Below are positions 15,025 through 57,381 of a stretch of DNA of 64,000 nt, piece after piece. Numbering within the stretch: position 1 is the stretch's first letter; every line of letters starts with the position of its first letter. Both the position numbers and the translations under genes were made by a program. Location of the stretch: positions 1 through 64,000 of IMG/VR virus record IMGVR_UViG_3300017971_000001; one strand, 5' to 3'. The notes beneath the pieces were generated by a model that did not search any database, was not told the origin of the DNA, and saw only the letters and a program-made list of their open reading frames with translations.

Positions 15025-15314
15025 GCCTGACCCCCGAGCAAGCCCAGGCGCTTATGCACGCCGAGGACACCGAGCGCACCGTTGTGCCGAAGTGTGACAT
15101 GACGCGCCTGGATCTCGTCCGCGCTCAAATGGACTACTACTTCCCGGCCAACGAGTTCCCGGACGCGACGCTTCACAAGCTCGTCGCGCATTGGAAGTCC
15201 GGCGGCGCGATCGTGGCAGCGAAGAACGAGCGGGCCGGCGTGACCGATCCGTTCCTGCTCATGATCTCTTCCAGCGAAGAGCGCGAAATCGGACCGCGGG
15301 GGCAATTCAACTAA
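15021..15314 (+). CDS. Hypothetical protein
   Basis: GTGA-coupled to the phosphatase gene; TAATG-coupled to the next gene. Confidence 0.6.
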   Translation: MSLTPEQAQALMHAEDTERTVVPKCDMTRLDLVRAQMDYYFPANEFPDATLHKLVAHWKSGGAIVAAKNERAGVTDPFLLMISSSEEREIGPRGQFN

Positions 15315-15445
15315 TGGATCGTCGATTCAGAGCGGCGCAGCGCCGCGCGACCGAAGAGGGCGGAGTCGAGGCGCTGCGCGCGCTCATGGCAGAGCACCGG
15401 CGCATTCGGCGCAGGGATTCGAGATTGATTAGGAGAGTGAAATGA
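15314..15445 (+). CDS. Tiny protein consisting almost entirely of a divergent SD-R tag
   Basis: MDRRFRAAQRRATEEGGVEALRALMAEHRR; coupled at both ends. Confidence 0.45.
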   Translation: MDRRFRAAQRRATEEGGVEALRALMAEHRRIRRRDSRLIRRVK

Positions 15446-15672
15446 TTCGCAAGGGATTGATCGCTGAGACCGCGGTGATCGGACTGTCGTCCATGGCGGT
15501 CGCCATGCTTCTGCAGAAGGCCTACAAGGTGACGGGCTACTACCCACCTAACCCGGTGTTCTACTTCGCGATCGGCGCGGGCACGCACCTGGCCTACGAG
15601 GCGCTCGGCGGGAACCGCTGGTACGTCGAGACCCGCAAGGCCGCGGACATGCCCAAGGGGCTGCTAGGGTGA
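15442..15672 (+). CDS. Small membrane protein
   Basis: AGGAG RBS; two hydrophobic segments. Confidence 0.65.
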   Translation: MIRKGLIAETAVIGLSSMAVAMLLQKAYKVTGYYPPNPVFYFAIGAGTHLAYEALGGNRWYVETRKAADMPKGLLG

Positions 15673-16172
15673 GCGACGAGCGCTTTCGCGAGCTCGAGCG
15701 CGCCGCCGCGGCGGGCGACCCGGACGCCCTGGGGGAATATGTCTCTCAGGCGGTGTCTCGAGGCCTGCCGGTAGACCCGGCGGCGATTCTGCCGCTGATC
15801 CGTGGGGCGACGGTCTACGCGCTAGTAGAGCACGAGCTCGAAGAAGAATTCGATCCGGCCAGGGTCACGGTATACGCCACAAGAGAAGAGGCGCGTGCCG
15901 AGGCCGATAGATTGCTCATTAACAGCGCAGTGGAAATTCTTGAAAGAGAGGGGTTCCCCGGTGGAGAGAATTGGGACAAATACCTTGAAGTGGCCTTTGA
16001 GGGGGATTTCGAGGTAGTTGACAGGGTCTGCGAAGTGATCCCTCGTTTCGGCTGGGACGAAGACGGAAACTTTCTTTATTCAAAGAGCGACGTTTTGCGA
16101 CTTGAGCTTATAGAGCTTGTCGAGTTTGAGCTCGGCCGTTTCTACGAGATCCAGGAAACGAGATTCCAATGA
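15669..16172 (+). CDS. SD-R-tag protein with acidic domain
   Basis: MSDERFRELERAAAAGDPDA N-terminus. Confidence 0.75.
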   Translation: MSDERFRELERAAAAGDPDALGEYVSQAVSRGLPVDPAAILPLIRGATVYALVEHELEEEFDPARVTVYATREEARAEADRLLINSAVEILEREGFPGGENWDKYLEVAFEGDFEVVDRVCEVIPRFGWDEDGNFLYSKSDVLRLELIELVEFELGRFYEIQETRFQ

Positions 16173-16453
16173 TCGTCCGGCGTCGAGTCGTTACCTGCGG
16201 ACCCGAGGCCCTGCTCGAGTCTCTGGACCGTGGGAACCGGGTGGTCGAGCGCCAGGTGATCTCGGATCACGAGGCGCGCCAGCTGGTCGAAGAGGGCATG
16301 GTGAGCGACCTGGGCATGATCCACCCTCTGCACCCCATGCACCCGCACCGTAATGGCGTTCCGGCCATGCACGGCCTGGGCGAGTCCGAGGACTACACGC
16401 CCGTCTGGATCATGGGCGCGCTGGGCTTGGCGGTTCTTTACCTGCTCAGCTAG
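16169..16453 (+). CDS. Small C-terminally anchored membrane protein
   Basis: MHGLG followed by the hydrophobic tail VWIMGALGLAVLYLLS. Confidence 0.6.
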   Translation: MIVRRRVVTCGPEALLESLDRGNRVVERQVISDHEARQLVEEGMVSDLGMIHPLHPMHPHRNGVPAMHGLGESEDYTPVWIMGALGLAVLYLLS

Positions 16454-16481
16454 GCCTCGTTGCGGGGCCGGGCGGATCGCG

Positions 16482-17075: not shown

Positions 17076-17076
17076 C

Positions 17077-17328: not shown

Positions 17329-17368
17329 TCGGTGCCATGTCTCGCGTCCTCTCGACAAGGAGGAAGTC

Positions 17369-17563: not shown

Positions 17564-17969
17564 ATTCACGCTGATCGAGCTCATGGTCGTGATCGCGATC
17601 GTCGCCCTGCTGCTGGCGATCGCGGTGCCAGGCATGCTTCACTTCCGCCAGACAGCGAACGAGTCCGCGGCCATGGAGTACATGCGCCAGTGGCACCAGG
17701 CGCAAGAGCGCTACCGCATGAAGCACAGCGTCTACGCCACGAGCGACGAAGCTCTGATCAGCGAGGGTCTGATCAGCAAGAAGAGCGCGGCCGGCAACGG
17801 CTACACGTTCGCGATCGACAACGCGGACAACAAGTACGTCTGGTCGGGCCGGGCGACTCCGCAGGTAGAAGGTCAGCGGCACTTCTATATCGACATGACC
17901 GGAGTGGTCCGTCACTCGACCGGCAGCCCGGCGGACGCGAGCAGCCCGCCAGTCCAGAGCAACAACTAG
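17520..17969 (+). CDS. Type IV pilin-like protein
   Basis: AGGAG RBS 9 nt upstream; FTLIELMVVIAIVALLLAIAVP N-methylation helix with E5; residue -1 is Arg rather than Gly. Confidence 0.85.
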   Translation: MNSASLASRTWTSRRFTLIELMVVIAIVALLLAIAVPGMLHFRQTANESAAMEYMRQWHQAQERYRMKHSVYATSDEALISEGLISKKSAAGNGYTFAIDNADNKYVWSGRATPQVEGQRHFYIDMTGVVRHSTGSPADASSPPVQSNN

Positions 17970-18994
17970 TAGCGGTCCCAGCCCTCGAGGTATCCGCCGC
18001 GGGCCCCGTGCCTCCCAGGGTCATTGAGGGGCACAGGCAAGTCCTCGAGCTCCGCCCAGTAACCTTCTGCTTCGTAGAGCCAGGCCTGCGCCGCGTCCTG
18101 GCCAGCGAAGTCCGCTCGCCACTTGCTGGGGTAAGGTCCGTCCGGCGGCAGTTGGTGCATGTAGCCGGTGTTGTCGATCAGAATGTTCAGATACCAGCCG
18201 TTGAAGTGCGGCGAGCTTTGCCAGTAGACGATCGCCTCTTCTCCGTCGCCGAGCGCGTAGGCCTCGTCGAGGTCAATGCGATCAGGGATCGGCTCGTTGA
18301 TCGGCTTGCCGACTCGCTCGCAAACCCGCGAGCAGAATCCGCGCCATGCTGGCGAGTCATGTTCGGGATTCTCAGGAAGTTCGACGCCGCACGCATAGCA
18401 GACCGAGTCGTCGTAGGGCTGCTCTTGGTCCGAGGAAGGGTTGAGCTCGATCCGGCGCGTTGTGTCACCGAACAGCAGCCAGTCGGCCATGGTGCTGTTG
18501 ACTTCCTGCTCCATTCGTCTGGCTCTGCGCTTGCTTTCTTCCTCTCGTGCCTTCGGAGTTCTCGGCCGTTCTGAGGTCGAGTTCGCGGCGGCGTCGATTG
18601 CCGTTTCGACGATTTGGGCGAGAACGTAACGAGGATCGGGGCCCCATTCTTCCTGCATGACCAAATCAAGTCGACTGTGGGCCATGTTCCCATAGAACGC
18701 AGCTGAGAGCTCTGGCAGGTTCCGGCGAGCGTAATCGATCAGCAGGTCGGTGTATTGGATTGCGTAGTCCGGCGACCTAGAGATCTGCAGGAAGTCGTCC
18801 GCCCATTGCCGCTTCTCGGAGTACTTGGCTCCGTAGAACTTCCCTGCCGACTGTTCGAGGAACTCGGCCAGCGCCAGGTCGCGCCGGTCGAGCTCGCCGG
18901 TGCGGAGTCGCTCTCGGATCAAGCGCTCGCGTTCTTCGGGGTCGCCGCTGCGCCGGACCCGGCGACGAGAGGCGTCTGGGTTCCGACGAATCAT
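17966..18994 (-). CDS. Tag-family protein (RRNP variant) with CxxC...CxxxC
   Basis: MIRRNPDASRRRVRRSGDPEERERLIRERLRTGEL. Confidence 0.7.
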   Translation of the reverse strand: MIRRNPDASRRRVRRSGDPEERERLIRERLRTGELDRRDLALAEFLEQSAGKFYGAKYSEKRQWADDFLQISRSPDYAIQYTDLLIDYARRNLPELSAAFYGNMAHSRLDLVMQEEWGPDPRYVLAQIVETAIDAAANSTSERPRTPKAREEESKRRARRMEQEVNSTMADWLLFGDTTRRIELNPSSDQEQPYDDSVCYACGVELPENPEHDSPAWRGFCSRVCERVGKPINEPIPDRIDLDEAYALGDGEEAIVYWQSSPHFNGWYLNILIDNTGYMHQLPPDGPYPSKWRADFAGQDAAQAWLYEAEGYWAELEDLPVPLNDPGRHGARGGYLEGWDRY

Positions 18995-19506
18995 GAGATT
19001 AGCCCGTGCTCCTCAATGTCCACTGAGAGGCTGGAGAGCTCGTAGCTCCCGTTGAAGATTTCGATCGCGTCTTCGTAGCGTTCTTGTTCGATCGCGAGCT
19101 CCACCTGAAGGCGCTGAGGGTCGTCCTCAGGAATCAAGTTCTCGTCGAGCTCGTTGTCGATCCATTCGACCGCTTCCCGGAGCGCGGCCCAGCGGTTCGT
19201 GAAGACGCCATGAAGCGTGTGGTTGGCAACGGTCCCGTCTCCGTCGTCTTCAATGTGGAGCACGTAGACCACGGGGAATGTACCGGTCCCCACCTGGCGC
19301 GCGATATGCCTTAGGTCGTACCTGAAGAGTTCGTGCAGGAGGCGGTTGACGGTCCCGGGCTCAAGGGTTCCCTCGCTGGCCAGCACGAGCTCCGCTGCGT
19401 CTTCGTAGACGCCTCGCCGCGCGCGCTCCTGGTGCAGCGCTTCGCGCTCGTTCAGCCCGCCTTCGATCGCGGCTCGCTCGAGCTCTCGCAGTCGTTCGTC
19501 GCTCAT
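18991..19506 (-). CDS. SD-R-tag protein, acidic
   Basis: MSDERLRELERAAIEGG. Confidence 0.75.
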   Translation of the reverse strand: MSDERLRELERAAIEGGLNEREALHQERARRGVYEDAAELVLASEGTLEPGTVNRLLHELFRYDLRHIARQVGTGTFPVVYVLHIEDDGDGTVANHTLHGVFTNRWAALREAVEWIDNELDENLIPEDDPQRLQVELAIEQERYEDAIEIFNGSYELSSLSVDIEEHGLIS

Positions 19507-19509
19507 GAC

Positions 19510-20602: not shown

Positions 20603-21301
20603 CTAACCTCTGCTCCGCCAGGTTAGATAGTGAATGGGGTCCTCCTCGAATCCAGAGCTCAAGAGTCCTGCGAAGTCGCCGGCGCTTTCCGCAAGTTCCT
20701 GCACGGTTTTCACGTGCTGCTCCGCTGCCTCCCTTTGCGCGGATACGAACGCGTCCGCCACGATCTCGAAGGTGTCTTCGTCACGCTCTCCGTCTTCGCC
20801 GATTGCCCAGATCGCGGTCTCCATTCGCTCGAAGCTGTAAGGGGGTCGATAGACGCTTCCGTGAAGGGCTTTGACCGCAATGGTGTTGACGACCCACGAT
20901 TCAGCGTCGTGGAAGTTGACCGTTGTCCGGACAGCCGGAAAGGTCATGAAGCCCTCCTCCATGAGGGCGTATTGCACGCTGAACATGAGCACGATCAAGT
21001 CGACGTTCAGCGGGTCCAGCCTTAGTGCCTGCCGCATGGTTCGGTGGGCCTGAACGAACAGGCGATCGGCTTGATCTCTATCTCCACCCCATTCCAGGTT
21101 CCGCGGCCCGCTGCCGCTACCCCATTCCAGATTCCGCTCAATCGAGCGCGCGAGCTCGAGTTCAAGCCATGAGAGCCTGCCGAGCTCCTCTGCTGTTGCG
21201 TCCTGGGTCCGATCGCGCCGGTCACGCAGATAGGCCAACTCGGCGTCCGGGTCACCTGCTTGCGCGGCTCGGTGAAGCTCTCGTTGCCGACGATCGCTCA
21301 T
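20603..21301 (-). CDS. SD-R-tag protein
   Basis: ATGA-coupled start; MSDRRQRELHRAAQAGDPDA. Confidence 0.75.
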   Translation of the reverse strand: MSDRRQRELHRAAQAGDPDAELAYLRDRRDRTQDATAEELGRLSWLELELARSIERNLEWGSGSGPRNLEWGGDRDQADRLFVQAHRTMRQALRLDPLNVDLIVLMFSVQYALMEEGFMTFPAVRTTVNFHDAESWVVNTIAVKALHGSVYRPPYSFERMETAIWAIGEDGERDEDTFEIVADAFVSAQREAAEQHVKTVQELAESAGDFAGLLSSGFEEDPIHYLTWRSRG

Positions 21302-22080
21302 GCCAACTCCAGCAGCCAGGGAATGAGGGTCTGGCGCATGGGCCGAAGAGTGAGTTCGAGCGAGTCCTCCTCGCTGTAACCGCCCTCCATGTTGTATGAC
21401 TCGTAGGTGTTCACCAGGAATCGATTGAACCCGTCGAAGCGCACGTCGCGGCCTCGTGAAACCTCGTAGGTGTCCCGAGCGCACGCGATCAGCCAGATCA
21501 ACGGACGCTGGATCGCAAAGAAGCTCTCGGCGTAGTCGACCCGCCGAGCTTCGGCTGAAGGGTCGTGAATGACCATGTCGCCAATGTCCTGGCCGAGGAG
21601 TCGAACGCGATCGCGGTGATACCTCTGTTCGATCGCGGTGACCTCCCATGGGCTTGAGACAGGCTGACCCGGACGTGCTGCACGCCGCGCCGCCACGACG
21701 ACGCTATCTGGAACGTCGTCGCCGAATCTGAGCCACGGCTCTTTAGCCTCAGCGACCGGAGCCCAAAAGTAGTCGACCAGGGCGGCGCAGGAGTTTGCGC
21801 ACGCCTCCAGCATGCGCTTCATGAACTGAACGTCGCTGGTCCCCAGGCCCTGCATTTCGAAGTAGAGGGCGGCAGTGATCCCCGAGAGCATGTCTCTTGG
21901 CTCGAGGTTCGGCAGGCCGCGAATCTCGACGAGGGCTGGTTCGAGCAGATTCCAGAGCACGGCGATCCGGGTGTTGGAGTAGATCCCCTGCCGCAGCGCT
22001 TCGGCCATGTAGGCGCGCTGGACGTCCGGGTCGCCCTCCAGATACAGGCGGCCGAGCTCTCGGAGTCTGCGGTCGCTCAC
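21298..22080 (-). CDS. SD-R-tag protein
   Basis: GTGA-coupled start; MSDRRLRELGRLYLEGDPDV. Confidence 0.75.
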   Translation of the reverse strand: MSDRRLRELGRLYLEGDPDVQRAYMAEALRQGIYSNTRIAVLWNLLEPALVEIRGLPNLEPRDMLSGITAALYFEMQGLGTSDVQFMKRMLEACANSCAALVDYFWAPVAEAKEPWLRFGDDVPDSVVVAARRAARPGQPVSSPWEVTAIEQRYHRDRVRLLGQDIGDMVIHDPSAEARRVDYAESFFAIQRPLIWLIACARDTYEVSRGRDVRFDGFNRFLVNTYESYNMEGGYSEEDSLELTLRPMRQTLIPWLLELA

Positions 22081-23243
22081 TGTCTGGGCCCCCTCTCGCG
22101 AAGATTGAACGGATCCTCGCTCTTGTGGCGGGCGACCCAGTAACGACCCGCGGACCATTTGAGCGCCTTGTGCCACGGGTCGTTCATGTAGTCGGCGTGA
22201 CCGTCAGCGTCCTTGCGGTCGAAGTCGACGAGGTTTTGAGCCAGGTCCATGACCCGCAAGACCTCTCCGTCCTCTCCAGCGCGCGTCCAGTAGTTCACGA
22301 GCTCGTAGTAGGCCTCAATGTCCCCCTCGGCCGCAGCGCGCTCGAGCTCCAGGGCGCGCTCGTCGCTTGGGTTCAGCCTGGGGTTGATTCCCAGGTCAAA
22401 CTTGAAGTCCGACGCTCGATCCAGAAGCTTTCGCGGGTCTTCTTCTGAAGCGAGCATGTTAGCCTTGCTCGCTGCGTTGGGAGAGACGTCTACAGCAATG
22501 GGTTGGAGCATGGCCGCGGCGACGCTGATCAGTTCGTTGGCCTGCTTCAGGTTGTTTGCGCGGGCTGCACTCAGAGCAGTGTCGAGTACGGCCAGGGGTT
22601 TCTTGCTGATCCGAGGGGGCGGAGCCCATGGGGGGTCGCCGGGCCCGGGTGGAGGGGCCTCGGGAGGCTCGACCTCGAACTCTTGCCGCTCCCAGCGCGC
22701 AAGTATGCCATTGGACCAGTCAAGTAGCCTGACGGCGTTGAGTAGCCGTGAAGACGCCTCTTCGTAGTCTCCGCGAAGAATGGCGCCTCGGGCCCAGACC
22801 ATGTCAATAAGCGCGTCTTCGATCGCGTCTCGCGGCCAGCCGGCGTAGTCGTCAAGATCTGACAGCGGATTCCCTTTCCATTTCGGATCGTCGTGCCAGG
22901 GGCCGTAATGCCCTGACTGCATTGCCTTGCGCCGCGCCTCGCGTTCGGTGTATTCGACGGCGTTGCTGACCTGGCCCATGCGGCGGTAGAGCTCTGCCGG
23001 CATGCGAATGTCTCGACCGACGGCCCGATCGACCGCGAAGCGGACGGGATACTGCCTGCCGCCAGGTCCGGGCACGAACATGTCGAATTCGATCCAGGCG
23101 TGCGCGTAAGGGATTCCTTCGATCTCTCCTTGCCCGATCACGGTTCCGTGAACGAGTCGGGCTGTGTCGTTGCCGGCGAACTCGCCCATAGGGAAGGCGA
23201 TCTCGTTCAGCGAGACCTCGAAGCAGTCGCCGAGGTCGCTCAT
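22077..23243 (-). CDS. Modular protein: Cys-His-Asp (papain/transglutaminase-like) domain, NP, helical domain, NP, SD-R tag
   Basis: GDCFE...LVHG...HAWIE...AVD...GHYGPW; WKGNP; LNPSDERALELERAAAEGD. Confidence 0.7.
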   Translation of the reverse strand: MSDLGDCFEVSLNEIAFPMGEFAGNDTARLVHGTVIGQGEIEGIPYAHAWIEFDMFVPGPGGRQYPVRFAVDRAVGRDIRMPAELYRRMGQVSNAVEYTEREARRKAMQSGHYGPWHDDPKWKGNPLSDLDDYAGWPRDAIEDALIDMVWARGAILRGDYEEASSRLLNAVRLLDWSNGILARWERQEFEVEPPEAPPPGPGDPPWAPPPRISKKPLAVLDTALSAARANNLKQANELISVAAAMLQPIAVDVSPNAASKANMLASEEDPRKLLDRASDFKFDLGINPRLNPSDERALELERAAAEGDIEAYYELVNYWTRAGEDGEVLRVMDLAQNLVDFDRKDADGHADYMNDPWHKALKWSAGRYWVARHKSEDPFNLRERGPRQ

Positions 23244-27849: not shown

Positions 27850-28371
27850 TCACCCTCCGTAGACCCAGTCCGGCACCGCGATCTCGTAGAACTCGCACGC
27901 CGACTCGGTCTGGGCGACGTAGGCCTCGCGGCTCGGGCAGAGCACGATATGGAGGTCGCCCTCGGTTACGCCCACTTCGGCCAGCAGAAGGGGCGAGCTT
28001 AGGACTTCCTGGAATGGGGTGACGTAGAGCACGCGCCAGGGGAAATCCACGAATCCGGCCCGGGTGGTTGCGGCGATTTCGTCGAGGTCGTTGGGATCAT
28101 GGCCGCCGCCGTAGTTTGCCGCGATCAGGCAGCCGTGTTCGTTCGTGCGCTGCTCCATGTTCCTGGCGAGGCCTTCCAGGGCCCGGCGCCCGTAGTGGAA
28201 CTGCCTCTGCACGAGCTCGGTCGGGCTGAGGATCTCGTTCGGAAGTCGCAGAAGCACCTCGACCGCACGCTCGTCCTCCCCGAGTCGCTCGAGTTCGTGA
28301 AAGAGGGCGTATCCGGCGGACTCGTCTCCGTCGGCGAAGGCGCGCTCAAGTTGGCGGAGCCTGCGATCCAT
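27850..28371 (-). CDS. SD-R-tag protein
   Basis: MDRRLRQLERAFADGDESA. Confidence 0.75.
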   Translation of the reverse strand: MDRRLRQLERAFADGDESAGYALFHELERLGEDERAVEVLLRLPNEILSPTELVQRQFHYGRRALEGLARNMEQRTNEHGCLIAANYGGGHDPNDLDEIAATTRAGFVDFPWRVLYVTPFQEVLSSPLLLAEVGVTEGDLHIVLCPSREAYVAQTESACEFYEIAVPDWVYGG

Positions 28372-34184: not shown

Positions 34185-34186
34185 AG

Positions 34187-37741: not shown

Positions 37742-37745
37742 TCGC

Positions 37746-41403: not shown

Positions 41404-41670
41404 GTGGACGAAGCTAAGTTGGACCTCGACGGAATGATCGACGAGGCGGTCAAGGTCGAGCCAAAGGGCGTGCTAGACGAAGCACGCCGGGACGCGCTGA
41501 AGCGGGTCGTCGATCGCCTCATGGAGCGAAAGGTCAAGCTTCCCCTGGTCAAGGTCAAGAAGATCGCTGAGGACATGCTCGGGGAGGGAGAGTGGTGCAA
41601 GCGGCGCACGTTCTACGACGTCTTCGCGAGGTTGCACCCTGAGTACCGCAAGTTCATTGGTCGCGCATGA
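41404..41670 (+). CDS. Hypothetical protein
   Basis: AAGGAAG RBS-like sequence; coupled to the next gene. Confidence 0.55.
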   Translation: MDEAKLDLDGMIDEAVKVEPKGVLDEARRDALKRVVDRLMERKVKLPLVKVKKIAEDMLGEGEWCKRRTFYDVFARLHPEYRKFIGRA

Positions 41671-46297: not shown

Positions 46298-47179
46298 ATG
46301 AGCCGCGATCGCCGAATCCAGCAGCTGATCAGCCGGGCCTCTGAGGGCGATTACGACGCCGCAGAGTCTTTGATCTTCGAGGCGCTCAGGTCCGGGCGCC
46401 CTTACTGGGATCCGGACCACAGGATCGTCAACGAATACAGGGCTTCCCTCGCTCGCTTCCTGGGCTACCTGCGCTGGCCGCGTTGGGAGGAATTCCTTCA
46501 GGTGATCGCCCCGATCCCCTGTTCGCTGCCGCGCTTTTCCAAGATTGGCCCAGAGACCGTCAAGAGGATCCCGCCCGACGTGCTCTCGGCGGCCGTCGGA
46601 GGCGCCGCCGAGTTCGTCGCCCCTCTGATCGGAATCGAGCGGGACGTGATCCTTGAGGCGGCGTCGCTGGGCGGACAGCACCGTCTCCTTGTGGGCAAGC
46701 TGCGCTCAGCGGACGAGCCGATCACCAGTAACCCCGAGGTGCGGGCGATCCGAGGGAGGCTCCACGACCTGCGTCACTTCGTGCGCGACGAGGCGCTCGG
46801 CGCTGACTTCAGAAACGACGAATACATTTCGTCGATCGGGGAGGCATTAACGAAGGCGGGCGCCAAGGGGATTCGTGAGTGGATCTCTTCTCAGGACATG
46901 AGCCGCTACAACCGTCTAGGCTATCTCTACGAGGCGACCTTCTACCTCGAGCTCGCGCTGGCGATTCAATGCGAGGCGGACGAGTTCGGCAATGACTTCC
47001 CAATCGTGCGTCAGGACGGCACGCCTTACGGCCCTTACCTCCCTTACCCCGGCCGGCCTGACCGCGGCTGGCGCCCGAGTCGCTCCTGCTCGACCAAGGG
47101 CAAGCGCGCGGCCCGCAAGGCCATGCTCGGCCCGGCGATCTTCGCGACTTCTTCCTACCTGCTGGAGCGCTTGCTGTGA
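46298..47179 (+). CDS. SD-R-tag protein
   Basis: TAGACT-ggagct-ATG; MSRDRRIQQLISRASEGDYDA. Confidence 0.75.
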   Translation: MSRDRRIQQLISRASEGDYDAAESLIFEALRSGRPYWDPDHRIVNEYRASLARFLGYLRWPRWEEFLQVIAPIPCSLPRFSKIGPETVKRIPPDVLSAAVGGAAEFVAPLIGIERDVILEAASLGGQHRLLVGKLRSADEPITSNPEVRAIRGRLHDLRHFVRDEALGADFRNDEYISSIGEALTKAGAKGIREWISSQDMSRYNRLGYLYEATFYLELALAIQCEADEFGNDFPIVRQDGTPYGPYLPYPGRPDRGWRPSRSCSTKGKRAARKAMLGPAIFATSSYLLERLL

Positions 47180-47664
47180 GCGACGCACGAATCCGCGCCG
47201 CCTTGCGCGACCTCTCGAGCACTGAGGAGGTCCAGGAGTTCGTGTTGCGACACATGATTCGGACGGGGGACTGGGTTCCTGCCCCTGAGAACAGGGGGGT
47301 CGACGACCCCGAGATTCCGCCAGAGGAGCTCTGGAGATCGGACCTCGAAAAGTACACGGGGTCGATCATTCTCACGAACGACTTCAGAGTCTTGGGTGAG
47401 GGTCCTGCGGATATCTTTTACTACGAAGGGCCCCGAGGCACACCCCCGTTGCCCTTCTTGCTCGAAGGGGGCAGCGAAGAGGTGGAGCAGTTCGACGGCT
47501 GGGCCGACGGTTGGTGGGATCTGAGTCCAGTCGTTCCGCTTTACTTCCCAGGCGTCGAAGGACCTTATTCCTTCGACGCCTACGGACCCTCCTACAGTGT
47601 CGACGGAAAGAGTCAGGGCCTGGGCTCTATCTGGGTCGAGCGGGAACTGGCGGATTTATTATGA
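47176..47664 (+). CDS. SD-R-tag protein (divergent)
   Basis: MSDARIRAAL...MIRTGD. Confidence 0.7.
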   Translation: MSDARIRAALRDLSSTEEVQEFVLRHMIRTGDWVPAPENRGVDDPEIPPEELWRSDLEKYTGSIILTNDFRVLGEGPADIFYYEGPRGTPPLPFLLEGGSEEVEQFDGWADGWWDLSPVVPLYFPGVEGPYSFDAYGPSYSVDGKSQGLGSIWVERELADLL

Positions 47665-49367
47665 GCGACGCACGTCAACGGCGACTCGAGCGCGCGGCCG
47701 CGGCTGGTGACCGGGAGGCGGTCAACGCTCTGGTCGTACAGGAATACCTCGAGAATGGTCGCTACGACTTCCTGGTCAATGACCGAGGGACCGAGTGGCA
47801 GGTCAGCGTGATCGCGCCGGAACCGGGCGACTGGGCGGACGACCCCCTCGTTCACTTTGCTCGCATTCCTAAGAACAGGCCTGACCTTGGGTTCGTTGTT
47901 GGGCTAAGGCGCTATTACGCCAGCACGATCCTAAAGACAGCGGAAAAGGGCGACGGGATCGGATTTGGTAGAGACTGGGGCTCCATTTCTGGAAAGGCGG
48001 TCAAAGAGGCCGCCCGCACGATCCGCTTGCTGGTCGAGGAGTCTGGGCGGCGCTTGGATCACCGGTACGTCAGTTTCGGCGAGGGCTTCAGGATCGACGC
48101 GCCGGGCTTCGAGTTCGGCAAGGATCGCGTCTGGGACCTCTGCCTTCACCGAGATTTTCCCAAGTGGGAGCGCTGGTATCCGTCCGGGTCATGCCCCGAA
48201 GGGAGGAGCTTGGGTGACCTGGTTTTTCGAAGGATCTCAAAGCGCCGGTCTCGCTTCGGAGGATTCCCGGGGCTCAAGGGCCTCCGGAACCTGCGTGGCC
48301 TCTCGCGCAGGCGCTTCGACGAGCTCGCCCGCGAGCAGAAGATCCACCCGCTCCCCCGCGGTTGGTGGGAGAGAAAAAAGAACCCGATCAGCACGGTCCG
48401 AAAGGGGCGTCGACTGTTCCGCAGTGTCTCGCCCTTTGAAATGAACGCGATCCTGACGACGGGCCGGGTTCTCGGTCGTCGGGCGTCGTTCTCGGAGGAC
48501 GTGACCCAGCACAAGACCAAGCGCTCGGACTGCGTGACCTTCTGGGGCACCAAGCTCAAGGACGTCCTCCACCACGGCGAGGACTACCTGCGCTACTTCC
48601 AGTCCCTGCCGATCGTGCGCGACGCCTTCGCTGCGCTGTGGCCGGTCTCGAGCCTGGCGGACAACCTCTACATGAAGACCAGGGATCAGCCGCACCGCTT
48701 CCGCTACACGAAGCTCGCCGTGCGACTCGCGCTCGACCTGACCCGCGAGCTCCAGGAGGGCCTCCGGCGGGCCCTGTTCGTCGCTGCGCAGGAGTCCGAG
48801 TCCCAGAAGCCAGAGCTCGAATCGACCAGCTACGTGATCGAGACGAAGCCGTTGAGCGGCGGGACGCTGTTCACCGGCAAAGACTCGCTCTCCGGGGGGC
48901 GGCGAGGACAGAGGCACAGCCCGCCCGAAGTCTGCACGAAGGACGCTGTCGGCATTGAGGACGTGCGGGTGTTCTACCTGGTCAAGGACGGAGAGGTCTG
49001 GGCAGAGATCTTTGACGAGTTCGACCTCCCCTTCGTGCCCGTGCCGACCTTCGACGACCTCGCGATCGAGCGCGCCGTCGCCGCGGTCTACGAGGCTGGC
49101 CCTCGCCTGGCCGAGCTCGAGCTCGCGCTGAAGGAGGCGGCGGAGAAGTTGAAACGCGGCGAGGACCTCCGCAAACCTCGCCCCTTGGAACGCTTGCTGT
49201 CTCACGCCTCCCTCGGGATCGACCGTCGCGAGCTCGGTGAATACGACAGCCAGCTGACCAGCAAGGCCAAGCGCCAGGGCTGGATCGAATTCGACCGCGC
49301 CGAGCGCCTCTGGGTTTTGACGGAGGCCGGTGAGGAGCGCGAGGAAGCGCTGAGGAACGAGTTATGA
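47661..49367 (+). CDS. SD-R-tag, NP-linked two-module protein
   Basis: MSDARQRRLERAAAAGDREA; KKNP linker; second module begins RLFRSVS (weakly ART-like). Confidence 0.72.
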   Translation: MSDARQRRLERAAAAGDREAVNALVVQEYLENGRYDFLVNDRGTEWQVSVIAPEPGDWADDPLVHFARIPKNRPDLGFVVGLRRYYASTILKTAEKGDGIGFGRDWGSISGKAVKEAARTIRLLVEESGRRLDHRYVSFGEGFRIDAPGFEFGKDRVWDLCLHRDFPKWERWYPSGSCPEGRSLGDLVFRRISKRRSRFGGFPGLKGLRNLRGLSRRRFDELAREQKIHPLPRGWWERKKNPISTVRKGRRLFRSVSPFEMNAILTTGRVLGRRASFSEDVTQHKTKRSDCVTFWGTKLKDVLHHGEDYLRYFQSLPIVRDAFAALWPVSSLADNLYMKTRDQPHRFRYTKLAVRLALDLTRELQEGLRRALFVAAQESESQKPELESTSYVIETKPLSGGTLFTGKDSLSGGRRGQRHSPPEVCTKDAVGIEDVRVFYLVKDGEVWAEIFDEFDLPFVPVPTFDDLAIERAVAAVYEAGPRLAELELALKEAAEKLKRGEDLRKPRPLERLLSHASLGIDRRELGEYDSQLTSKAKRQGWIEFDRAERLWVLTEAGEEREEALRNEL

Positions 49368-49810: not shown

Positions 49811-50706
49811 GCGACGAGCGAATCCAGCGCCTCGAGCGCGAGCTCACGATCGACTCTAGCAACGTCGACCTTCAGCACGCCCTGGTCCGCGAGCGGGTTC
49901 GGGTCGGTGACTACCTCCCGATCGCGCTCGAGTATCTGCTCGAGGGCAAGCCGGTGCTGCCCTGGCAGTTCAACGCGATCAGCTACGTGTTTCTGGAGGC
50001 CGAGCGCCTCGGTCGGGAAACGGGCTATCAGGAGGGGCGTGTCGAGGCGATCTACCGGCCGGGCGTGGTCAACGCGAACGGCATGGTCCCTATGTGGGGA
50101 CTGGATCAGGCTCCCGACTTCGACGGCTGGGGGAACCCGACTTTCGCGCCCGCCTTGCGGCGCTTCTACGTCAAGACGGCAAGCCTCTGGCTGCAAGGAA
50201 TGGGAGCCCTGGGCGGATTCAGCGAAGAGGAACTCCATGAACTCCCAAGTCGTTTGCGTTATTTGCCCGGCGACCGCCCTGCCTATTCGCTTGAGGTCAC
50301 CCGGCGCTTCGTTCCCCCGCGTCACGTTCCGGCGCTGCACCTGATCGAGGGCTGTCGATACGAATACATGCACAAGGGCAAGCTGAGTCCGGAAGACTCG
50401 GCTTCGATCCCTCGCTTTTTCCTCGAAGAGTTCGAGGGACGCACGTATTACGCAGGCAGGGATCGCTACGACTGCCGGCACGCACGCATGCCCTACAACC
50501 CTCTTCTGCGTCGTGAGTTCGCAGGCAGGTTCCCCGAGCTCCACATGCCTCAGAGGGTCCTGGCGGCCGTCAGGCGCCCCGGCGGATACGTCGACAACTC
50601 CTCGATCTTCCTCGACGTTCGTATGTTCGAGGCGGCGCGGATCATGAAGCGCGTGGGCAAAGGCCGGCGCTGGAAGAACAACCCGTGGCGTCGCTCTCAC
50701 CGCTGA
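49807..50706 (+). CDS. SD-R-tag protein ending in KNNPWRRSHR
   Basis: MSDERIQRLERELTID. Confidence 0.72.
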   Translation: MSDERIQRLERELTIDSSNVDLQHALVRERVRVGDYLPIALEYLLEGKPVLPWQFNAISYVFLEAERLGRETGYQEGRVEAIYRPGVVNANGMVPMWGLDQAPDFDGWGNPTFAPALRRFYVKTASLWLQGMGALGGFSEEELHELPSRLRYLPGDRPAYSLEVTRRFVPPRHVPALHLIEGCRYEYMHKGKLSPEDSASIPRFFLEEFEGRTYYAGRDRYDCRHARMPYNPLLRREFAGRFPELHMPQRVLAAVRRPGGYVDNSSIFLDVRMFEAARIMKRVGKGRRWKNNPWRRSHR

Positions 50707-50955: not shown

Positions 50956-51060
50956 GCTGAGGGAAGCAGGCGGAAAAAGTCGCCATAACTTCTTTCAGAG
51001 CAATCGCTGAGGGAAGCAGGCGGAAAAAGTCGCCATAACTTCTTTCAGAGCAATCGCTGA
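50956..51060. repeat. Exact 50-bp tandem duplication plus a partial third copy
   Basis: gctgagggaagcaggcggaaaaagtcgccataacttctttcagagcaatc at 50956-51005 and 51006-51055; nearby 10-bp tandems at 50801-50820 and 50946-50965. Confidence 0.95.
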
Positions 51061-54817: not shown

Positions 54818-55227
54818 TAGTAGTCCTCCCGCTTGCGGGCTCCCTCTTTGAGGCTCTTGAACAACTCGACCGCCTGATCCCGCGTCGGCGGCACGCCCTC
54901 CGATTTCAGGAGGTCCGTTCCGCGCCTCCAGATCTCGTAGTATTCGTCGTCGGTCGCGCAGATCAAGTTCAATTTGCCGAACATGAGCTTCTCCTTCTCG
55001 TCGCTGAACTGCTTCAGCCAGTCAGCCAGGCGCGGGTCGATCCGAATGACGAGATCGACGTCGCTGTCCGGCCGCGCGTTTCCGTAAGCATGACTCCCCG
55101 TCAAGAAAGCGTGCTGCTTCCCCCTGCGCGTGACCCTGGCCAGCGCTATGAGCAGCAGAAAGACCGCCGTGCTCGAGATCAACGACATGAAGCAGGCAAG
55201 CATGCCCAGCGCTCCCAACTCTTCCAC
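54817..55227 (-). CDS. Minimal nucleotidyltransferase (MNT/Pol-beta fold) with an N-terminal hydrophobic segment
   Basis: FLTGSHAYG...DSDVDL (GS, DxD); start inferred from a TAG/GTG overlap. Confidence 0.75.
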   Translation of the reverse strand: MEELGALGMLACFMSLISSTAVFLLLIALARVTRRGKQHAFLTGSHAYGNARPDSDVDLVIRIDPRLADWLKQFSDEKEKLMFGKLNLICATDDEYYEIWRRGTDLLKSEGVPPTRDQAVELFKSLKEGARKREDY

Positions 55228-55818
55228 TACCAACTCCCGTGCAGCTTGTTTAAACCTTCGCCGCAGCAATGTTGAACTCCTGAGCCAACGACCCCCTCGG
55301 GGTAGATCAGGTGAAAAGAGAACCTCTTCAGGAATGTGTCCATAGGTCCCGTGCCTACCCTTCTCCTCAACCCAACTCCGTCCTGGACGACGTAGCAGCG
55401 ATACCTTCTGCGGCGGTTCACTACCAATCACCATGGCAGAGGGTCAATCCTGATCCGGTCTGTGCATACAGACCCTTGCCGACGACCCCTTCGCCATACA
55501 CAAGGTGCTTGCCAATGAACTTCGAGAAGTCGTCCATGGCCCCAATGCCCGAGGCGCAACTCTGACCGACGCCGCCCTGAATCGAGAACATGCGATACCT
55601 TCTGCGACGCCTCAAAGGTGGATCGTGTAGTTGCCGGACATGCGTGACGTGCCGCGACCAATCCAGACGCCCGATCGAAGCAGGCGAGAGGACCGCCACT
55701 TCCTAGCCCCGGTTCCGAGTGCTCGGTTCAAACCGATTCCGGTCCCCGTTTGATTGCCGACGCCCGTTGCCGGAGCCGCTGAATAGCGATAGAGCCGCCT
55801 TCTTCCCGCACGATTCAT
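55227..55818 (-). other. Second cluster of three RRRR-family microprotein genes
   Basis: 55612-55818, 55421-55615 and 55227-55421; the last two are clear paralogs. Confidence 0.75.
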
Positions 55819-55847
55819 GTTCGCGCTCCAGGGCTTATCCTTGCCCT

Positions 55848-56327
55848 ATGGACGATCCGCCTGTGATCCAGTTCAAGCCGAAGCCAGACCCTCCTCCCAA
55901 GAAGGAGGAGGAGGTCAAGGACGACGGTTACCTCGCGCCCGAGCTCGGGAAGCTCGTCAACCGCCGCGTGTCCCTCCCCAACGAACTGTGGGAAGAAGTG
56001 ATCGACATGGCGAAGGCGGGCGGGAGTAACTACCAGGACCTGCTGGCTTGCTTGATCGACCTCGGCATGAGGGCTCAGGCGCTGGGAGAAGACCGGCCTC
56101 GTCGGGTCCTGGTCGAGACAGGGATTCACACGCGGATCGAGCTCCTGCGCGAGGGGCAGACTCCAGAGTTCCTCGGCGAGGTCCGGATCCCCCAGGTGCC
56201 CGCGGTCGGTGAGGCGATCTCGTTCCAGCGGGCCGGTTACGTCGTCGAGCAGCGCGCCTGGCGCCTGAAGGAGGACGGGGCGACAGCGTTCCTGCGGGTC
56301 AAGCGGTTCGGCAAGAAGAAGCATTAG
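55848..56327 (+). CDS. Ribbon-helix-helix-like regulator fused to a small domain
   Basis: TATCCT-N6-ATG; RRVSLPNELWEEVIDMAKAGG. Confidence 0.6.
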   Translation: MDDPPVIQFKPKPDPPPKKEEEVKDDGYLAPELGKLVNRRVSLPNELWEEVIDMAKAGGSNYQDLLACLIDLGMRAQALGEDRPRRVLVETGIHTRIELLREGQTPEFLGEVRIPQVPAVGEAISFQRAGYVVEQRAWRLKEDGATAFLRVKRFGKKKH

Positions 56328-56956
56328 CGACAGGCCAGGCTTCCTTCGACGTGGCGGATCCCCTCGTCACCGACAACGAACTCCATACCGCGCTGGATCT
56401 CCTTGCCGCACTCGAAGCACGTTCCGTGTCCCTCTGCCCTAAGTACTCGGGCGACCTCGTCCGGATCCTCTCCGATCGTGCTCGTCGGATCGAACTTCCC
56501 CATGACCGCAGGCTCGATCGGGCTGAGCTCAGGGGCCGTGCGCTGCTGCTTGATCTGCTGGGCCATTCCCTTGATCCGCTGGCCGAGGCGGTTGATCTCT
56601 TCAATGAACACGTCCCGGTCGCCCGCTCGTTTCTCGAGTCGTTCGAGCCGGAGGCTGATCTCGGTCAACTGCTGCTTCAGGTTGGGGCTCAGCGCTTCGT
56701 CCGTGCGCAGGCGATCCGTTTGCGGCTTGGCCTGGCGGAGCAGGTAGTCGCTATCGGGGCGGCGTCGCTTCTCCTCCTTCGCCTGAACGCGCTGAATCTC
56801 GAAGACCAGGCTTTCGTGTACCTCTTGGACGAGCAGGGTCGCTTCTTCGAGCTCGGGGGCCGCGGAGCCCCTCGACGCGGCAATGATCACGTCGCCGCCG
56901 ATCGCAATGTTGTGTAGGGCGCGGGCGACCTCAAGGATCGATCTCAGGTTCTTCAT
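56324..56956 (-). CDS. Coiled-coil protein with a C-terminal CxxC
   Basis: ATGA-coupled; CFECG...H...C. Confidence 0.6.
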   Translation of the reverse strand: MKNLRSILEVARALHNIAIGGDVIIAASRGSAAPELEEATLLVQEVHESLVFEIQRVQAKEEKRRRPDSDYLLRQAKPQTDRLRTDEALSPNLKQQLTEISLRLERLEKRAGDRDVFIEEINRLGQRIKGMAQQIKQQRTAPELSPIEPAVMGKFDPTSTIGEDPDEVARVLRAEGHGTCFECGKEIQRGMEFVVGDEGIRHVEGSLACR

Positions 56957-57381
56957 GACTCGTCGTCCCCTTCCGTTCCCTCCGTCGTCCATTCGTAGCC
57001 AGGAGGCGGGGGATACAGTTGATTGCTGGGGCCCGTGAACGTCCCGCCGGGCGGGACAGGGACATAGCCGGGAGGAAGTTGGTGGTGGCGGTGAGCCATG
57101 AGCCGGTCTTCGATATCCTCCCGAATCTCCTGGTTCGTCAGGCCCGAGAAGCTGAGGTCGACGATCCTGCGAGCCTCGAGAACGGCCTGTCCGGCGTCCG
57201 GAGCCATTTGAAACGGGCGCTGGAACTGAGCGGAGTGAATCCGCGTCGCGAGCTCGGCGACCAGGCGAGGGAAGGCAAGGCTCGGCCGTTCGCGCCGAGA
57301 CTTCTCCCGGTCCAGGCGCTGCTGGTCCTCAGGGTCCGCGTCTGCGTTTCGTTCCAACTTGCGTACGTCTTCGTCGCTCAT
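56953..57381 (-). CDS. SD-R-tag protein
   Basis: ATGA-coupled; MSDEDVRKLERNADADPED. Confidence 0.65.
   Translation of the reverse strand: MSDEDVRKLERNADADPEDQQRLDREKSRRERPSLAFPRLVAELATRIHSAQFQRPFQMAPDAGQAVLEARRIVDLSFSGLTNQEIREDIEDRLMAHRHHQLPPGYVPVPPGGTFTGPSNQLYPPPPGYEWTTEGTEGDDES

What the first reader, a model, noticed from the sequence alone, without database searches (positions are those of the whole stretch)
15314..57381. About 20 unrelated proteins share one ~30-aa helical 'SD-R' tag: a possible targeting or packaging system
Seen: the motif S-D-x-R-[LIQ]-R-x-L-[EQ]-R-x-A-x-x-G-D-x-x-A-x(8-10)-R-x-G(EL) starts the ORFs at 15314, 15669, 19506, 20600, 21301, 22080, 26386, 27407, 28371, 31042, 46298, 47176, 47661, 49364, 49807 and 57381. 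It follows RRNP/RRNA near the N-terminus at 18994, 23725 and 32862, and recurs internally after NP at about 22370, 31765 and 39855. Examples: MSDERFRELERAAAAGDPDA, MSDRRQRELHRAAQAGDPDA, MSDEEIRELQRLAALGDPDA, MSDARQRRLERAAAAGDREA. The sequence after the tag shows no mutual similarity, and the genes sit on both strands in several operons. Established: T4 internal proteins use a short shared N-terminal capsid-targeting sequence, and AxxGDxxA resembles a Sel1/TPR half-repeat. Inference: a portable helix-hairpin that docks diverse cargo onto one partner (capsid interior for co-injection, scaffold, chaperone or membrane), with cargo swapped by recombination at the tag. I do not recognise this family.
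Basis: partly seen in the sequence, partly recalled or inferred. Interest (0 to 1): 0.92.

Follow-up and report, generated by a model that had tools for sequence, protein, structure and literature searches.

The report
Shared helical-hairpin tag on phage proteins
About twenty otherwise unrelated proteins of an uncultured 245-kb phage each begin with the same 32-residue two-helix hairpin, an undescribed module that is also found on some Planctomycetota proteins and probably docks its varied cargo onto a common partner that is still unknown.

Summary
A profile built only from 235 tags of other contigs recovers 19 in-frame copies in the window (14-43 bits). Shuffled translations score at most 12.1 bits. 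Three claimed copies (47176, 27407, 39855) are marginal.

The tag is predicted with high confidence as a helix-turn-helix hairpin, flanked by Pro-rich or basic linkers. Conservation is at protein level, not DNA level. The sequences after the tag show no mutual similarity.

The window is the first 64 kb of a 245-kb IMG/VR contig, a jumbo phage. The profile finds 538 proteins among 1.84 billion representatives. All 20 that were looked up are unnamed or called hypothetical. Among the best 149, 79 carry the tag at residue 1 and 60 carry 2-6 tags as beads on a string. Internal tags are preceded by [RK][RK]-N-[PSAG]. Related phages fuse or split modules exactly at tag boundaries.

No Pfam, NCBIfam or PHROG family matches the tag, Sel1 and TPR included, and no cultured phage has it. 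It also heads chromosomal Planctomycetota proteins, for example Imm5-like ones.

Best reading: a portable adaptor hairpin heading modular accessory proteins. Capsid targeting remains possible but is untested, and the cellular copies weaken it.

The parts
15314..15445 (+). 43-aa ORF that is little more than a divergent tag (begins M-D-R-R-F-R)
   Evidence: 18.5 bits; 14.1 bits with the independent profile
15669..16172 (+). tagged ORF, 167 aa; tag at 15669-15764
   Evidence: 42.9 bits; no Pfam, NCBIfam or PHROG hit
17966..18994 (-). tagged ORF, 342 aa, with the short leader M-I-R-R-N-P-D; degenerate tag plus an extra helix of the 'GEL..LALAEFL' type
   Evidence: 20.7 bits
18991..19506 (-). tagged ORF, 171 aa; tag at 19411-19506
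   Evidence: 37.0 bits
19707..20600 (-). tagged ORF, 297 aa (GTG start, begins V-R-D-E-Q-I-R-E-L-Q-R)
   Evidence: 16.1 bits
20603..21301 (-). tagged ORF, 232 aa
   Evidence: 32.1 bits
21298..22080 (-). tagged ORF, 260 aa. In relative P0028 the equivalent module is fused in frame to the upstream protein
   Evidence: 33.0 bits
22077..23243 (-). 388-aa ORF with an internal tag at 22275-22373, preceded by R-L-N-P; 56 residues follow the tag
   Evidence: 38.3 bits
23240..23725 (-). tagged ORF, 161 aa, with an Arg-rich 13-aa leader ending R-R-N-A-D. The leader overlaps, out of frame, the Lys-rich end of the multi-HTH gene 23679-25715
   Evidence: 35.9 bits
25682..26386 (-). tagged ORF, 234 aa. Its cargo is homologous to the second module of the two-tag protein P0022
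   Evidence: 18.2 bits
26673..27407 (-). ORF, 244 aa, with a marginal, divergent tag
   Evidence: 12.2 bits, E 0.009; 7.0 bits, not significant
27850..28371 (-). tagged ORF, 173 aa (begins M-D-R-R-L-R-Q-L-E-R)
   Evidence: 33.9 bits
30227..31042 (-). tagged ORF, 271 aa, net charge -40. Its cargo is homologous to the second module of P0095
   Evidence: 36.6 bits
31039..32862 (-). 607-aa ORF with two tags: one after an Arg-rich leader (32731-32829) and one internal after R-R-N-P (31669-31770)
   Evidence: 17.3 and 19.9 bits
39853..39948 (+). marginal internal copy (N-P-D-E-R-R-R-R ... S-G-E-L) inside ORF 39349-40989
   Evidence: 14.5 bits, E 0.002; not found by the independent profile
46298..47179 (+). 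tagged ORF, 293 aa, conserved over its full length in L108 (24 % identity) and P0168 (63 %)
   Evidence: 19.3 bits
47176..47664 (+). ORF, 162 aa, with a divergent tag (keeps S-D-x-R-I-R and R-T-G; lacks L-E-R and G-D)
   Evidence: it was a seed; not recovered by the independent profile
47661..49367 (+). tagged ORF, 568 aa
   Evidence: 35.2 bits
49364..49810 (+). tagged ORF, 148 aa
   Evidence: 18.4 bits
49807..50706 (+). tagged ORF, 299 aa
   Evidence: 19.6 bits
56953..57381 (-). tagged ORF, 142 aa
   Evidence: 23.2 bits

Best explanation
The tag is a small, autonomously folding adaptor domain. It consists of one helix, a G-D-(P) turn and a second helix, 32 residues in all, and it looks like a single unit of an alpha-solenoid repeat (Sel1/HEAT-like in pattern but not a member of those families). 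It heads each unit of a large, fast-diversifying set of modular accessory proteins in a small clade of high-GC phages, jumbo phages among them, that are probably associated with Planctomycetota. Each unit has four parts: an optional basic leader or junction [RK][RK]-N-[PSAG], the hairpin, a Pro-rich linker, and a variable cargo of about 60-350 aa. Units are encoded either as separate, translationally coupled ORFs, as in this window, or fused into proteins with 2-6 units, as in relatives.

Shown: the fold prediction, the autonomy of the tag, the protein-level conservation, the copy number, the heterogeneity of the cargo, fusion and fission at tag boundaries, and the presence of the tag on cellular Planctomycetota proteins.

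Inferred: the invariant charged stripe (D2, R6, E9, R10, R29) is a binding surface through which all units dock onto one common partner or onto each other. This would bring diverse, mostly acidic and soluble effectors to one place. Host proteins carry the same tag, so the partner is at least as likely to be a host-conserved cytoplasmic component as a virion part. The identity of the partner is unknown.
For: Significance and independence of the copies. AlphaFold2 on a 64-tag alignment gives helix 2-14, a turn, and helix 18-32, with pLDDT 90-97 over residues 1-30. Position frequencies over 257 tags: D2 0.91, R6 0.89, L8 0.87, R10 0.92, G15 0.82, D16 0.77, A19 0.79, R29 0.78. Pro is enriched about 2.5-fold at +33 to +36 and at -8 to -4, and basic residues are enriched at -1 and -2. 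Selection acts on the protein: codon position 3 is 49 % identical against 59 % and 65 % at positions 1 and 2, only 55 % of identical residues use the same codon, and the upstream DNA is not conserved. Cargo is unrelated within the window and heterogeneous across 135 tag proteins: GNAT, NUDIX, GGACT, Mg-chelatase-like, DUF5591, L5 gp82 and Imm5-like domains, with most proteins hitting no family. Density: 19-22 copies in this 64 kb and 7 more in two other pieces of the same contig; 12 in 23 kb, 10 in 21 kb and 11 in 15 kb in other phage contigs. Module families occur both stand-alone and as downstream units of fused proteins. At one junction the window has a stop plus restart where relative P0028 reads on in frame through K-Q-Y-N-P-P. 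Cellular copies: 8 of 11 credible genome hits are Planctomycetota MAGs, set among ordinary housekeeping neighbours. The bacterial cargo is Imm5_like, 26.9 bits against a cut-off of 25. 150 of 161 tag proteins lack any strongly hydrophobic 19-mer.
Against: No partner was identified. No non-tag protein recurs across the sampled tag-bearing contigs. The strongly conserved residues could be explained largely by hairpin stability alone: helix caps, an Ala/Leu core and salt bridges. Consistent with that, the best PDB sequence matches are de novo designed helical proteins. Retention of a tag on every unit of fused proteins is not required for simple docking. No structure of tag plus cargo could be obtained, and only pLDDT and secondary structure are returned by the prediction tool, so packing of the hairpin against the cargo cannot be excluded.
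Confidence: 0.45

Rival explanations
1. Virion-packaging signal. The hairpin binds the prohead core or scaffold, so tagged proteins are encapsidated and ejected with the DNA, like T4 internal proteins with their capsid targeting sequence.
For: The logic is the same as for the T4 CTS: only the N-terminal tag is conserved on an otherwise diverse set of proteins (PMC3012670). Jumbo phages can carry tens of head-internal proteins (PMC7411985). In L003 a four-tag protein lies about 2.5 kb from a homologue of window gene 6228-7472, which follows the tail-fibre genes. Multi-domain phage proteins are often predicted to be packaged (PMC5512222).
Against: The same tag heads chromosomal Planctomycetota genes that sit among housekeeping genes. 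Fused proteins keep one tag per unit although one per polypeptide would suffice. There is no conserved cleavage motif after the hairpin, only a variable Pro-rich linker. Most tagged window genes sit in arrays of unknown genes next to HTH and exonuclease genes, not in the structural block. The window cargo is strongly acidic; by my recollection, not tested here, DNA-embedded internal proteins are basic.
Confidence: 0.17
2. Cis-acting structural element without a common partner. The hairpin would be a generic N-terminal cap, folding nucleus or solubility helper, derived from an alpha-solenoid repeat and copied along with each module by duplication and shuffling.
For: Every unit keeps its own tag even when fused. 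In the bacterial Imm5-like family the tag is followed, by eye, by a second similar 'L-A-A-x-L-G-D-P-A-A' helix and then an all-alpha domain. The conserved residues fit helix caps, a small core and salt bridges, and designed helical proteins are the best PDB matches.
Against: The cargos have no detectable relation to one another and include different enzyme folds. A Pro-rich linker separates tag and cargo. About 90 % conservation of three exposed charged residues across phages and bacteria is more than a cap usually shows.
Confidence: 0.2
3. Maturation signal of polyproteins. The junction [RK][RK]-N-[PSAG] would be a cleavage site, cut either by a protease or by Asn-Pro autocleavage, with the hairpin serving as the recognition element. 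Beads-on-a-string precursors would thus be cut into units that start like the stand-alone M-S-D proteins.
For: N is at position 0 in 54-72 % of internal or leader-preceded tags, R at -1/-2 in 40-56 %, and an extra upstream NP occurs in 24 % against a background of 0.46 % per residue. N aligns with M1 of the stand-alone ORFs. Processing of polyvalent phage proteins has precedent (PMC5512222).
Against: Most leaders are only 3-8 residues long, so cutting them off seems pointless. No protease domain was detected in or beside the tagged proteins. The one candidate N-domain (window 22854-23243) gave an unusable model, pLDDT 41. N-P-D-E is also a canonical helix N-cap (own knowledge).
Confidence: 0.1
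4. DNA-level element: a recombination hotspot, a translation-initiation signal or a promoter-linked repeat at gene starts, with the peptide similarity as a by-product.
For: The copies sit at gene starts, and the first three codons are nearly always ATG/GTG AGC GAC.
Against: Third codon positions are the least conserved, Arg is spelt CGC, CGA, CGG, CGT and AGA, and the 30 nt upstream are not conserved. 123 of 257 tags lie inside long ORFs. The peptide is conserved across contigs with no DNA similarity.
Confidence: 0.02

Closest known systems
Capsid targeting sequence (CTS) of T4 internal proteins
   Same: A short N-terminal element is the only thing shared by a diverse set of phage proteins, and it is transferable in principle (PMC3012670).
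   Different: The tag here is a folded 32-residue hairpin rather than a short peptide. It also occurs internally, once per unit, in fused proteins, and it occurs on cellular proteins. Neither removal by a prohead protease nor presence in virions is known for it.
Effector-associated domains (EADs) of bacterial conflict systems (PMC7159879)
   Same: Both are small, non-enzymatic, mostly alpha-helical adaptor domains at the termini of many different effector domains. Both have many paralogues per genome and are lineage-specific. EADs are proposed to couple proteins by homotypic contacts.
   Different: No core NTPase or vWA component carrying a cognate copy was found beside the cellular or phage copies. 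None of 64 isolated tags matches an EAD model. One of 135 full proteins hit EAD8 at 4.4e-4, at an unknown position.
Polyvalent proteins of phages and conjugative elements (PMC5512222)
   Same: The relatives' 2-6-unit proteins are strings of unrelated domains in one phage polypeptide.
   Different: Here every domain is preceded by the same hairpin and junction. The usual polyvalent repertoire (MuF, ParB, ArdC, metallopeptidase) was not detected.
Sel1-like, TPR and PBS-lyase HEAT-like repeats
   Same: Both show a helix-turn-helix with the signature A-A-x-x-G-D-x-x-A ... L ... G. The tag profile weakly cross-hits a Pseudomonas lipoprotein with that signature (15 bits).
   Different: The tag occurs as a single unit per module, not in tandem arrays. 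No significant hit to the Pfam Sel1, TPR or HEAT models was found: 0, 1 and 1 of 64 tags at E up to 10, and none in proteins with 4-6 tags. The PDB Sel1 protein 3rjv matches only at E 0.33.
Encapsulation peptides of bacterial microcompartments and cargo-loading peptides of encapsulins (own knowledge, not tested)
   Same: A short helical tag, joined by a flexible linker to unrelated cargo enzymes, directs them into a protein shell.
   Different: Those are single amphipathic helices or short linear peptides, and no shell gene is linked here.

Membership tests
Sel1 repeat (Pfam PF08238) | Significant match to the family profile | tested here: not met
   No Sel1 hit in 64 isolated tags at E up to 10, in 9 multi-tag proteins at E up to 1, or in 135 tag proteins at E up to 0.001. 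PDB Sel1 protein 3rjv matches only at E 0.33.
Sel1 repeat (Pfam PF08238) | Tandem arrays of 36-44-residue repeats forming a solenoid | tested here: not met
   There is one tag per unit. Tags in fused proteins are separated by unrelated segments, median 178 aa.
Sel1 repeat (Pfam PF08238) | Helix-turn-helix unit with the A-x-x-G-[DNH]-x-x-A signature | tested here: met
   AlphaFold2 predicts a hairpin with pLDDT 90-97. Position frequencies: A12 0.77, G15 0.82, D16 0.77, A19 0.79.
TPR / PBS-lyase HEAT-like repeats | Significant match to the family profiles | tested here: not met
   TPR_14 hit 1 of 64 tags at E 0.15, and HEAT_PBS hit 1 of 64 at E 0.037; both are below the curated cut-offs.
T4-type capsid targeting sequence | N-terminal element shared by otherwise unrelated phage proteins | tested here: met
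T4-type capsid targeting sequence | Tagged proteins are present inside virions, and the tag is removed by the prohead protease | not testable with these tools
   The phage is uncultured and there are no proteomic data. No conserved cleavage motif follows the hairpin.
Effector-associated domains (EAD1-10) | A cognate copy on a core NTPase, vWA or VMAP component in the same neighbourhood or genome | tested here: not met
   The cellular neighbourhoods are unrelated housekeeping genes with no recurrent core component. The phage neighbourhoods have none either.
Effector-associated domains (EAD1-10) | Profile match to an EAD family | tested here: inconclusive
   No EAD is among the hits of the 64 isolated tags. 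One of 135 full-length proteins matches EAD8 at 4.4e-4, but the member and the position were not identified.
Polyvalent proteins | Two to fifteen distinct domains in one phage-encoded polypeptide | tested here: met
   60 of the 149 best hits have 2-6 tags with unrelated intervening modules. This applies to relatives; within the window only 22077-23243 and 31039-32862 have more than one unit.
Polyvalent proteins | Characteristic domain repertoire and virion-gene context | tested here: not met
   No MuF, ParB, ArdC or metallopeptidase domains were found, and the contexts are arrays of unknown genes.
Imm5 / Imm5_like (cargo of the bacterial tagged family only) | Match above Pfam's gathering score | tested here: met
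   P0162 scores 26.9 bits against a cut-off of 25, over residues 77-161, that is, downstream of the tag. Four relatives score below the cut-off.

The most novel reading that the evidence does not exclude
The hairpin is an address label used on a proteome scale. More than a tenth of this phage clade's genes, and some host genes, would carry it to send soluble effectors to a single destination: the capsid interior for co-injection, or a phage- or host-built compartment or hub in Planctomycetota cells. The [RK][RK]-N-P junctions would be processing sites that release the units from beads-on-a-string precursors. That would amount to a polyprotein-plus-address strategy not described for tailed phages.
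Probability: 0.15. Interest if true: 0.9.

Novelty: new variant of a known kind. Interest (0 to 1): 0.72.

Why it matters
Shared short tags on unrelated cargo are how cells and viruses address proteins; examples are the T4 CTS, microcompartment and encapsulin peptides, and EAD/Death-like adaptors. Here one undescribed 32-residue hairpin heads roughly a quarter of the genes in 64 kb of a jumbo phage. It heads hundreds of unnamed metagenomic proteins and also occurs on proteins of the probable host phylum.

If it is an address or docking label, it defines the accessory (probably host-interaction) proteome of a whole group of uncultured phages in one stroke. It would also give a handle for finding their common partner, and it would provide a compact, portable tag for protein recruitment. 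In addition, it links this phage clade to Planctomycetota, for which very few phages are known. Even if the hairpin is only a structural cap, the one-tag-per-unit architecture is a clear example of how phages build, fuse and split modular proteins.

Tried and rejected
- Family searches on the tagged proteins found nothing: Pfam, NCBIfam and PHROGs (apart from one weak cargo hit).
- No related DNA turned up in cultured phages: megablast of 25 kb and tblastn of one tag against 50,697 phage records both gave no match.
- Three DNA-pattern scans of IMG/VR gave mostly chance matches. True tags appeared only in this contig and four others.
- A by-eye resemblance of the L104 protein to the TIGR02996 domain was not confirmed by NCBIfam and was dropped.
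- Foldseek of the hairpin model against the PDB gave nothing below E = 4.6.
- The N-domain of ORF 22077-23243 was considered as a possible peptidase. It has no PDB sequence match, only one homologue and an unusable AlphaFold model, pLDDT 41, so the idea remains untested.
- A word-based homologue search for the cargo of 46298-47179 found only itself and one relative, so no deep alignment was possible for any cargo.
- A search for a recurrent non-tag protein (a candidate partner) across 13 loci, 12 of them from phage-like contigs and one from a Planctomycetota MAG contig, found none.
- EAD-type coupling was rejected on gene context.
- The DNA-level repeat explanation was rejected on codon evidence.
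- Literature searches for the tag strings and for comparable descriptions found nothing.

Full report
**1. What is in the window**

The window has 62-67 % G+C and is densely packed with genes on both strands, many with 4-nt stop/start overlaps. It equals positions 1-64000 of IMGVR_UViG_3300017971_000001, a 245,276-bp viral contig.

Recognisable genes are:
- two collagen-repeat tail-fibre proteins (1265-3478, 3490-6225);
- a glycosyltransferase-like protein (8688-10313);
- a patatin-like phospholipase (11148-12038);
- a GP88-family protein (37674-39026);
- an MRE11-type exonuclease (41667-42938);
- a 678-aa protein with DUF4314 and several HTH motifs (23679-25715).

The exonuclease's nearest cultured relatives are actinophages at about 27 % identity. 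No cultured phage shares DNA with the window. This is therefore an uncultured jumbo phage.

**2. Check of the observation**

- A profile built from 13 copies recovers 7 further copies at whole-sequence E values of 4e-6 to 3e-4. Nothing else in the six-frame translation scores below E = 0.3.
- Reversed and shuffled translations never exceed 9.2 and 12.6 bits.
- The strictest test used a profile built only from 235 tags in 139 proteins of other contigs. It recovers 19 window copies at 14.1-42.9 bits, against shuffled maxima of at most 12.1.
- Three copies (47176, 27407, 39855) are divergent. They are supported only by window-derived profiles or by eye.
- The regions after the tag are unrelated: all-against-all BLASTP gives nothing below E = 0.02.

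**3. Protein or DNA?**

Over the first 14 codons of 11 M-S-D copies, identity is 59 %, 65 % and 49 % at codon positions 1, 2 and 3. Only 55 % of identical residues use the same codon. Arg is spelt five ways. The 30 nt upstream share nothing. Selection therefore acts on the peptide.

**4. Anatomy of the tag**

AlphaFold2 was run on a 64-tag alignment. It predicts helix 2-14, a three-residue turn and helix 18-32, with pLDDT 90-97 over the first 30 residues and low confidence after that.

Position frequencies were taken over 257 tags from 161 proteins:
- Position 0 is M or N, and position 1 is S, P or G.
- Conserved positions are D2 0.91, L/I5, R6 0.89, L8 0.87, E9 0.78, R10 0.92, A12 0.77, G15 0.82, D16 0.77, P17 0.40, A19 0.79, L23 0.63, R29 0.78 and G31 0.57.
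- Pro is enriched about 2.5-fold just after the hairpin (+33 to +36) and before it (-8 to -4). Basic residues reach 36-52 % at -1 and -2.

My reading, which is an inference, is this: S/N, D2, G15, D16-P17 and G31 are helix caps; L5, L8, A12, A19 and L23 form the small core; D2, R6, E9, R10 and R29 form an exposed charged stripe. The hairpin is bounded by linker-like sequence on both sides, so it looks like an autonomous unit.

**5. Distribution**

The 20-copy profile was searched against 1.84 billion representative proteins. It finds 538 proteins at E up to 0.001 and 18 at E up to 1e-10.

Among the best 149:
- 79 have one tag at residue 1;
- 60 have 2-6 tags inside proteins of up to 1,630 aa;
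- 10 have one tag that is not at residue 1 (behind a short leader or internal).

Of the 257 tags, 98 start M-S-D at residue 1, 36 follow a 3-20-residue basic leader, and 123 are internal. Leader-preceded and internal tags begin [RK][RK]-N-[PSAG]-(G)-D-E. The N aligns with M1 of the stand-alone form. A second NP a few residues upstream is present in 24 % of internal tags.

The twenty proteins looked up carry no informative name (one is called 'hypothetical protein'). All but one come only from metagenome assemblies in Logan, JGI or ENA, and nearly all are singletons. In IMG/VR, true tags were found only in this contig, a 275-kb contig and three shorter ones.

Copy density is high in phage contigs:
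- 7 more copies in two other pieces of this contig (L016, L036);
- 12 in 23 kb (L004);
- 10 in 21 kb (L217);
- 11 in 15 kb (L218).

These contigs share a few non-tag proteins with the window at 24-47 % identity. They therefore form a loose clade.

**6. The tag is not confined to viruses**

After profile confirmation, 14 loci held the tag. Eight of the 11 credible ones are Planctomycetota MAGs, and three MAGs appear two or three times. One further locus, in a 190-kb contig binned as Deltaproteobacteria, has 7 copies in 8 kb and looks like a phage.

The Planctomycetota genes carry a single N-terminal tag. They sit among ordinary cellular genes: sigma-54 activator, response regulator, Ser/Thr kinase, cytochrome bd oxidase, malate synthase, isocitrate lyase, BatA/vWA.

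One bacterial family of about 225 aa has 17 members. Those that carry a source name are called hypothetical proteins, two of them of 'Planctomycetes bacterium'. It has the tag, then a further 'L-A-A-Y-L-G-D-P-A-A' helix, then an Imm5/Imm5_like domain that starts at about residue 77. The tag therefore lies outside the Pfam model.

This has two consequences. The phages with the expansion probably infect Planctomycetota; this is an inference from the motif sharing and G+C content, and there are no CRISPR data. And the tag cannot be purely a virion-specific signal.

**7. Units are fused and split at tag boundaries**

Segments between tags in fused proteins have a median of 178 aa, and cargo in single-tag proteins a median of 133 aa. 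Several cargo families occur both ways:
- the cargo of window ORF 25682-26386 matches the second unit of P0022;
- the cargo of 30227-31042 matches the second unit of P0095;
- a Mg-chelatase-like unit is internal in P0001, P0003 and P0005 and stand-alone in P0135.

The clearest case is ORF 22077-23243. It ends with a stop that overlaps the GTG of the next tagged ORF (21298-22080). In relative P0028, which is 83 % identical in the N-domain, the same C-terminal sequence runs on in frame through K-Q-Y-N-P-P into another tag and unit. The evolutionary unit is thus tag plus cargo.

**8. What the cargo is**

Pfam over 135 tag proteins gives only scattered hits: DUF5591 (3), GNAT (2), DUF5754 (2), and one each of NUDIX, GGACT, Mg-chelatase, L5 gp82, Imm5_like, EAD8, YadA head and others.

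150 of 161 tag proteins have no strongly hydrophobic 19-mer. The window's tagged proteins are mostly very acidic, with net charge -9 to -40. They look like soluble accessory or host-interaction proteins, not structural ones.

**9. Comparison with known families**

- No Sel1, TPR or HEAT model matches significantly, even in proteins with 4-6 tags. The refuting condition 'maps to an ordinary Sel1/TPR repeat' is therefore not met, although the signature resembles one such hairpin.
- A profile search of the PDB gives only de novo designed helical proteins at E 0.01-0.05 and a Sel1 protein at E 0.33. Foldseek gives nothing.
- The logic resembles three known things: the T4 capsid targeting sequence, effector-associated adaptor domains and polyvalent proteins. 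The defining features that could be tested for the latter two are not met (see the membership table).
- No paper in the library holds the tag strings or describes such a family.

**10. Mechanism**

The best-supported reading is a portable adaptor hairpin that marks each unit for binding to a common partner or to other tags (confidence about 0.45). The evidence bears on the alternatives as follows:

- Capsid targeting. The cellular copies, and the retention of one tag per unit in fusions, argue against a pure packaging signal (about 0.17).
- Structural cap. The fact that every fused unit keeps its own tag, together with the helix-cap and salt-bridge logic, keeps a purely structural role alive (about 0.2).
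- Processing site. The conserved basic-Asn junction keeps a processing role alive (about 0.1), although most leaders are only 3-8 residues long.
- DNA-level explanation. This is rejected on the codon evidence.

No partner was found in the sampled fragments.

**11. Verdict**

This is a real, statistically robust and undescribed protein module with an unusual one-tag-per-unit architecture. It is greatly expanded in a small clade of uncultured phages, jumbo phages among them, that are linked to Planctomycetota. Its function is not established.

Noticed in passing
window 34186-34275 (+): A tRNA-Met (anticodon CAT), 90 nt long, lies between two minus-strand ORFs inside the tagged-gene region.
   Followed up: no
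window 33357-33879: A 123-bp tandem repeat, 4.3 copies at 68 % match, lies inside ORF 32865-34184 (-). It corresponds to a 41-residue protein repeat in an unknown 439-aa protein next to a two-tag gene.
   Followed up: no
window 50956-51060: A perfect 50-bp direct repeat (2.1 copies) lies in the intergenic space just after the plus-strand block of tagged genes (46298-50706). It may be a regulatory or origin-like element.
   Followed up: no
window 99-319 and 23690-23801: There are Lys-rich coding repeats in the first ORF (26-736) and at the C-terminal end of the multi-HTH protein (23679-25715). The Arg-rich leader of the tagged ORF that starts at 23725 overlaps the second of these in another frame.
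   Followed up: partly
window 1265-6225: Two large collagen-triple-helix tail-fibre proteins (737 and 911 aa) are followed by a gene (6228-7472) that is conserved at 47 % identity in the tag-bearing contig L003.
   Followed up: partly
window 11148-12038: The phage encodes a patatin-like phospholipase (Pfam E 2e-18).
   Followed up: no
L216 3182-4243 and 18319-18762: A related tag-bearing phage contig encodes a full-length DnaJ (J domain, Cys-rich and C-terminal domains) and a protein with a trigger-factor N-terminal domain. These phage-borne chaperone parts could be relevant to handling many modular proteins.
   Followed up: no
L108 (JAJDAN010000066.1, 190.5 kb) and L174 (JBFWYD010000002.1, 249 kb): These are large contigs binned into a 'Deltaproteobacteria' MAG and a Planctomycetota MAG. 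L108 has 7 tags in 8 kb and looks like a mis-binned or integrated jumbo phage. L174 has one tag with the N-P-D-E junction that is typical of the phage copies.
   Followed up: partly
L096 2027-2497 and L116 5061-5531: Planctomycetota proteins of 156 aa carry the tag in front of a segment that resembles, by eye, a formylglycine-generating-enzyme/sulfatase-modifying domain. The only support is a weak NCBIfam hit to SenA, E 0.043.
   Followed up: partly
window, starts of tagged genes: No obvious Shine-Dalgarno sequence precedes the tagged ORFs. Most starts overlap the previous stop (ATGA or GTGA), which suggests translational coupling along the arrays.
   Followed up: no
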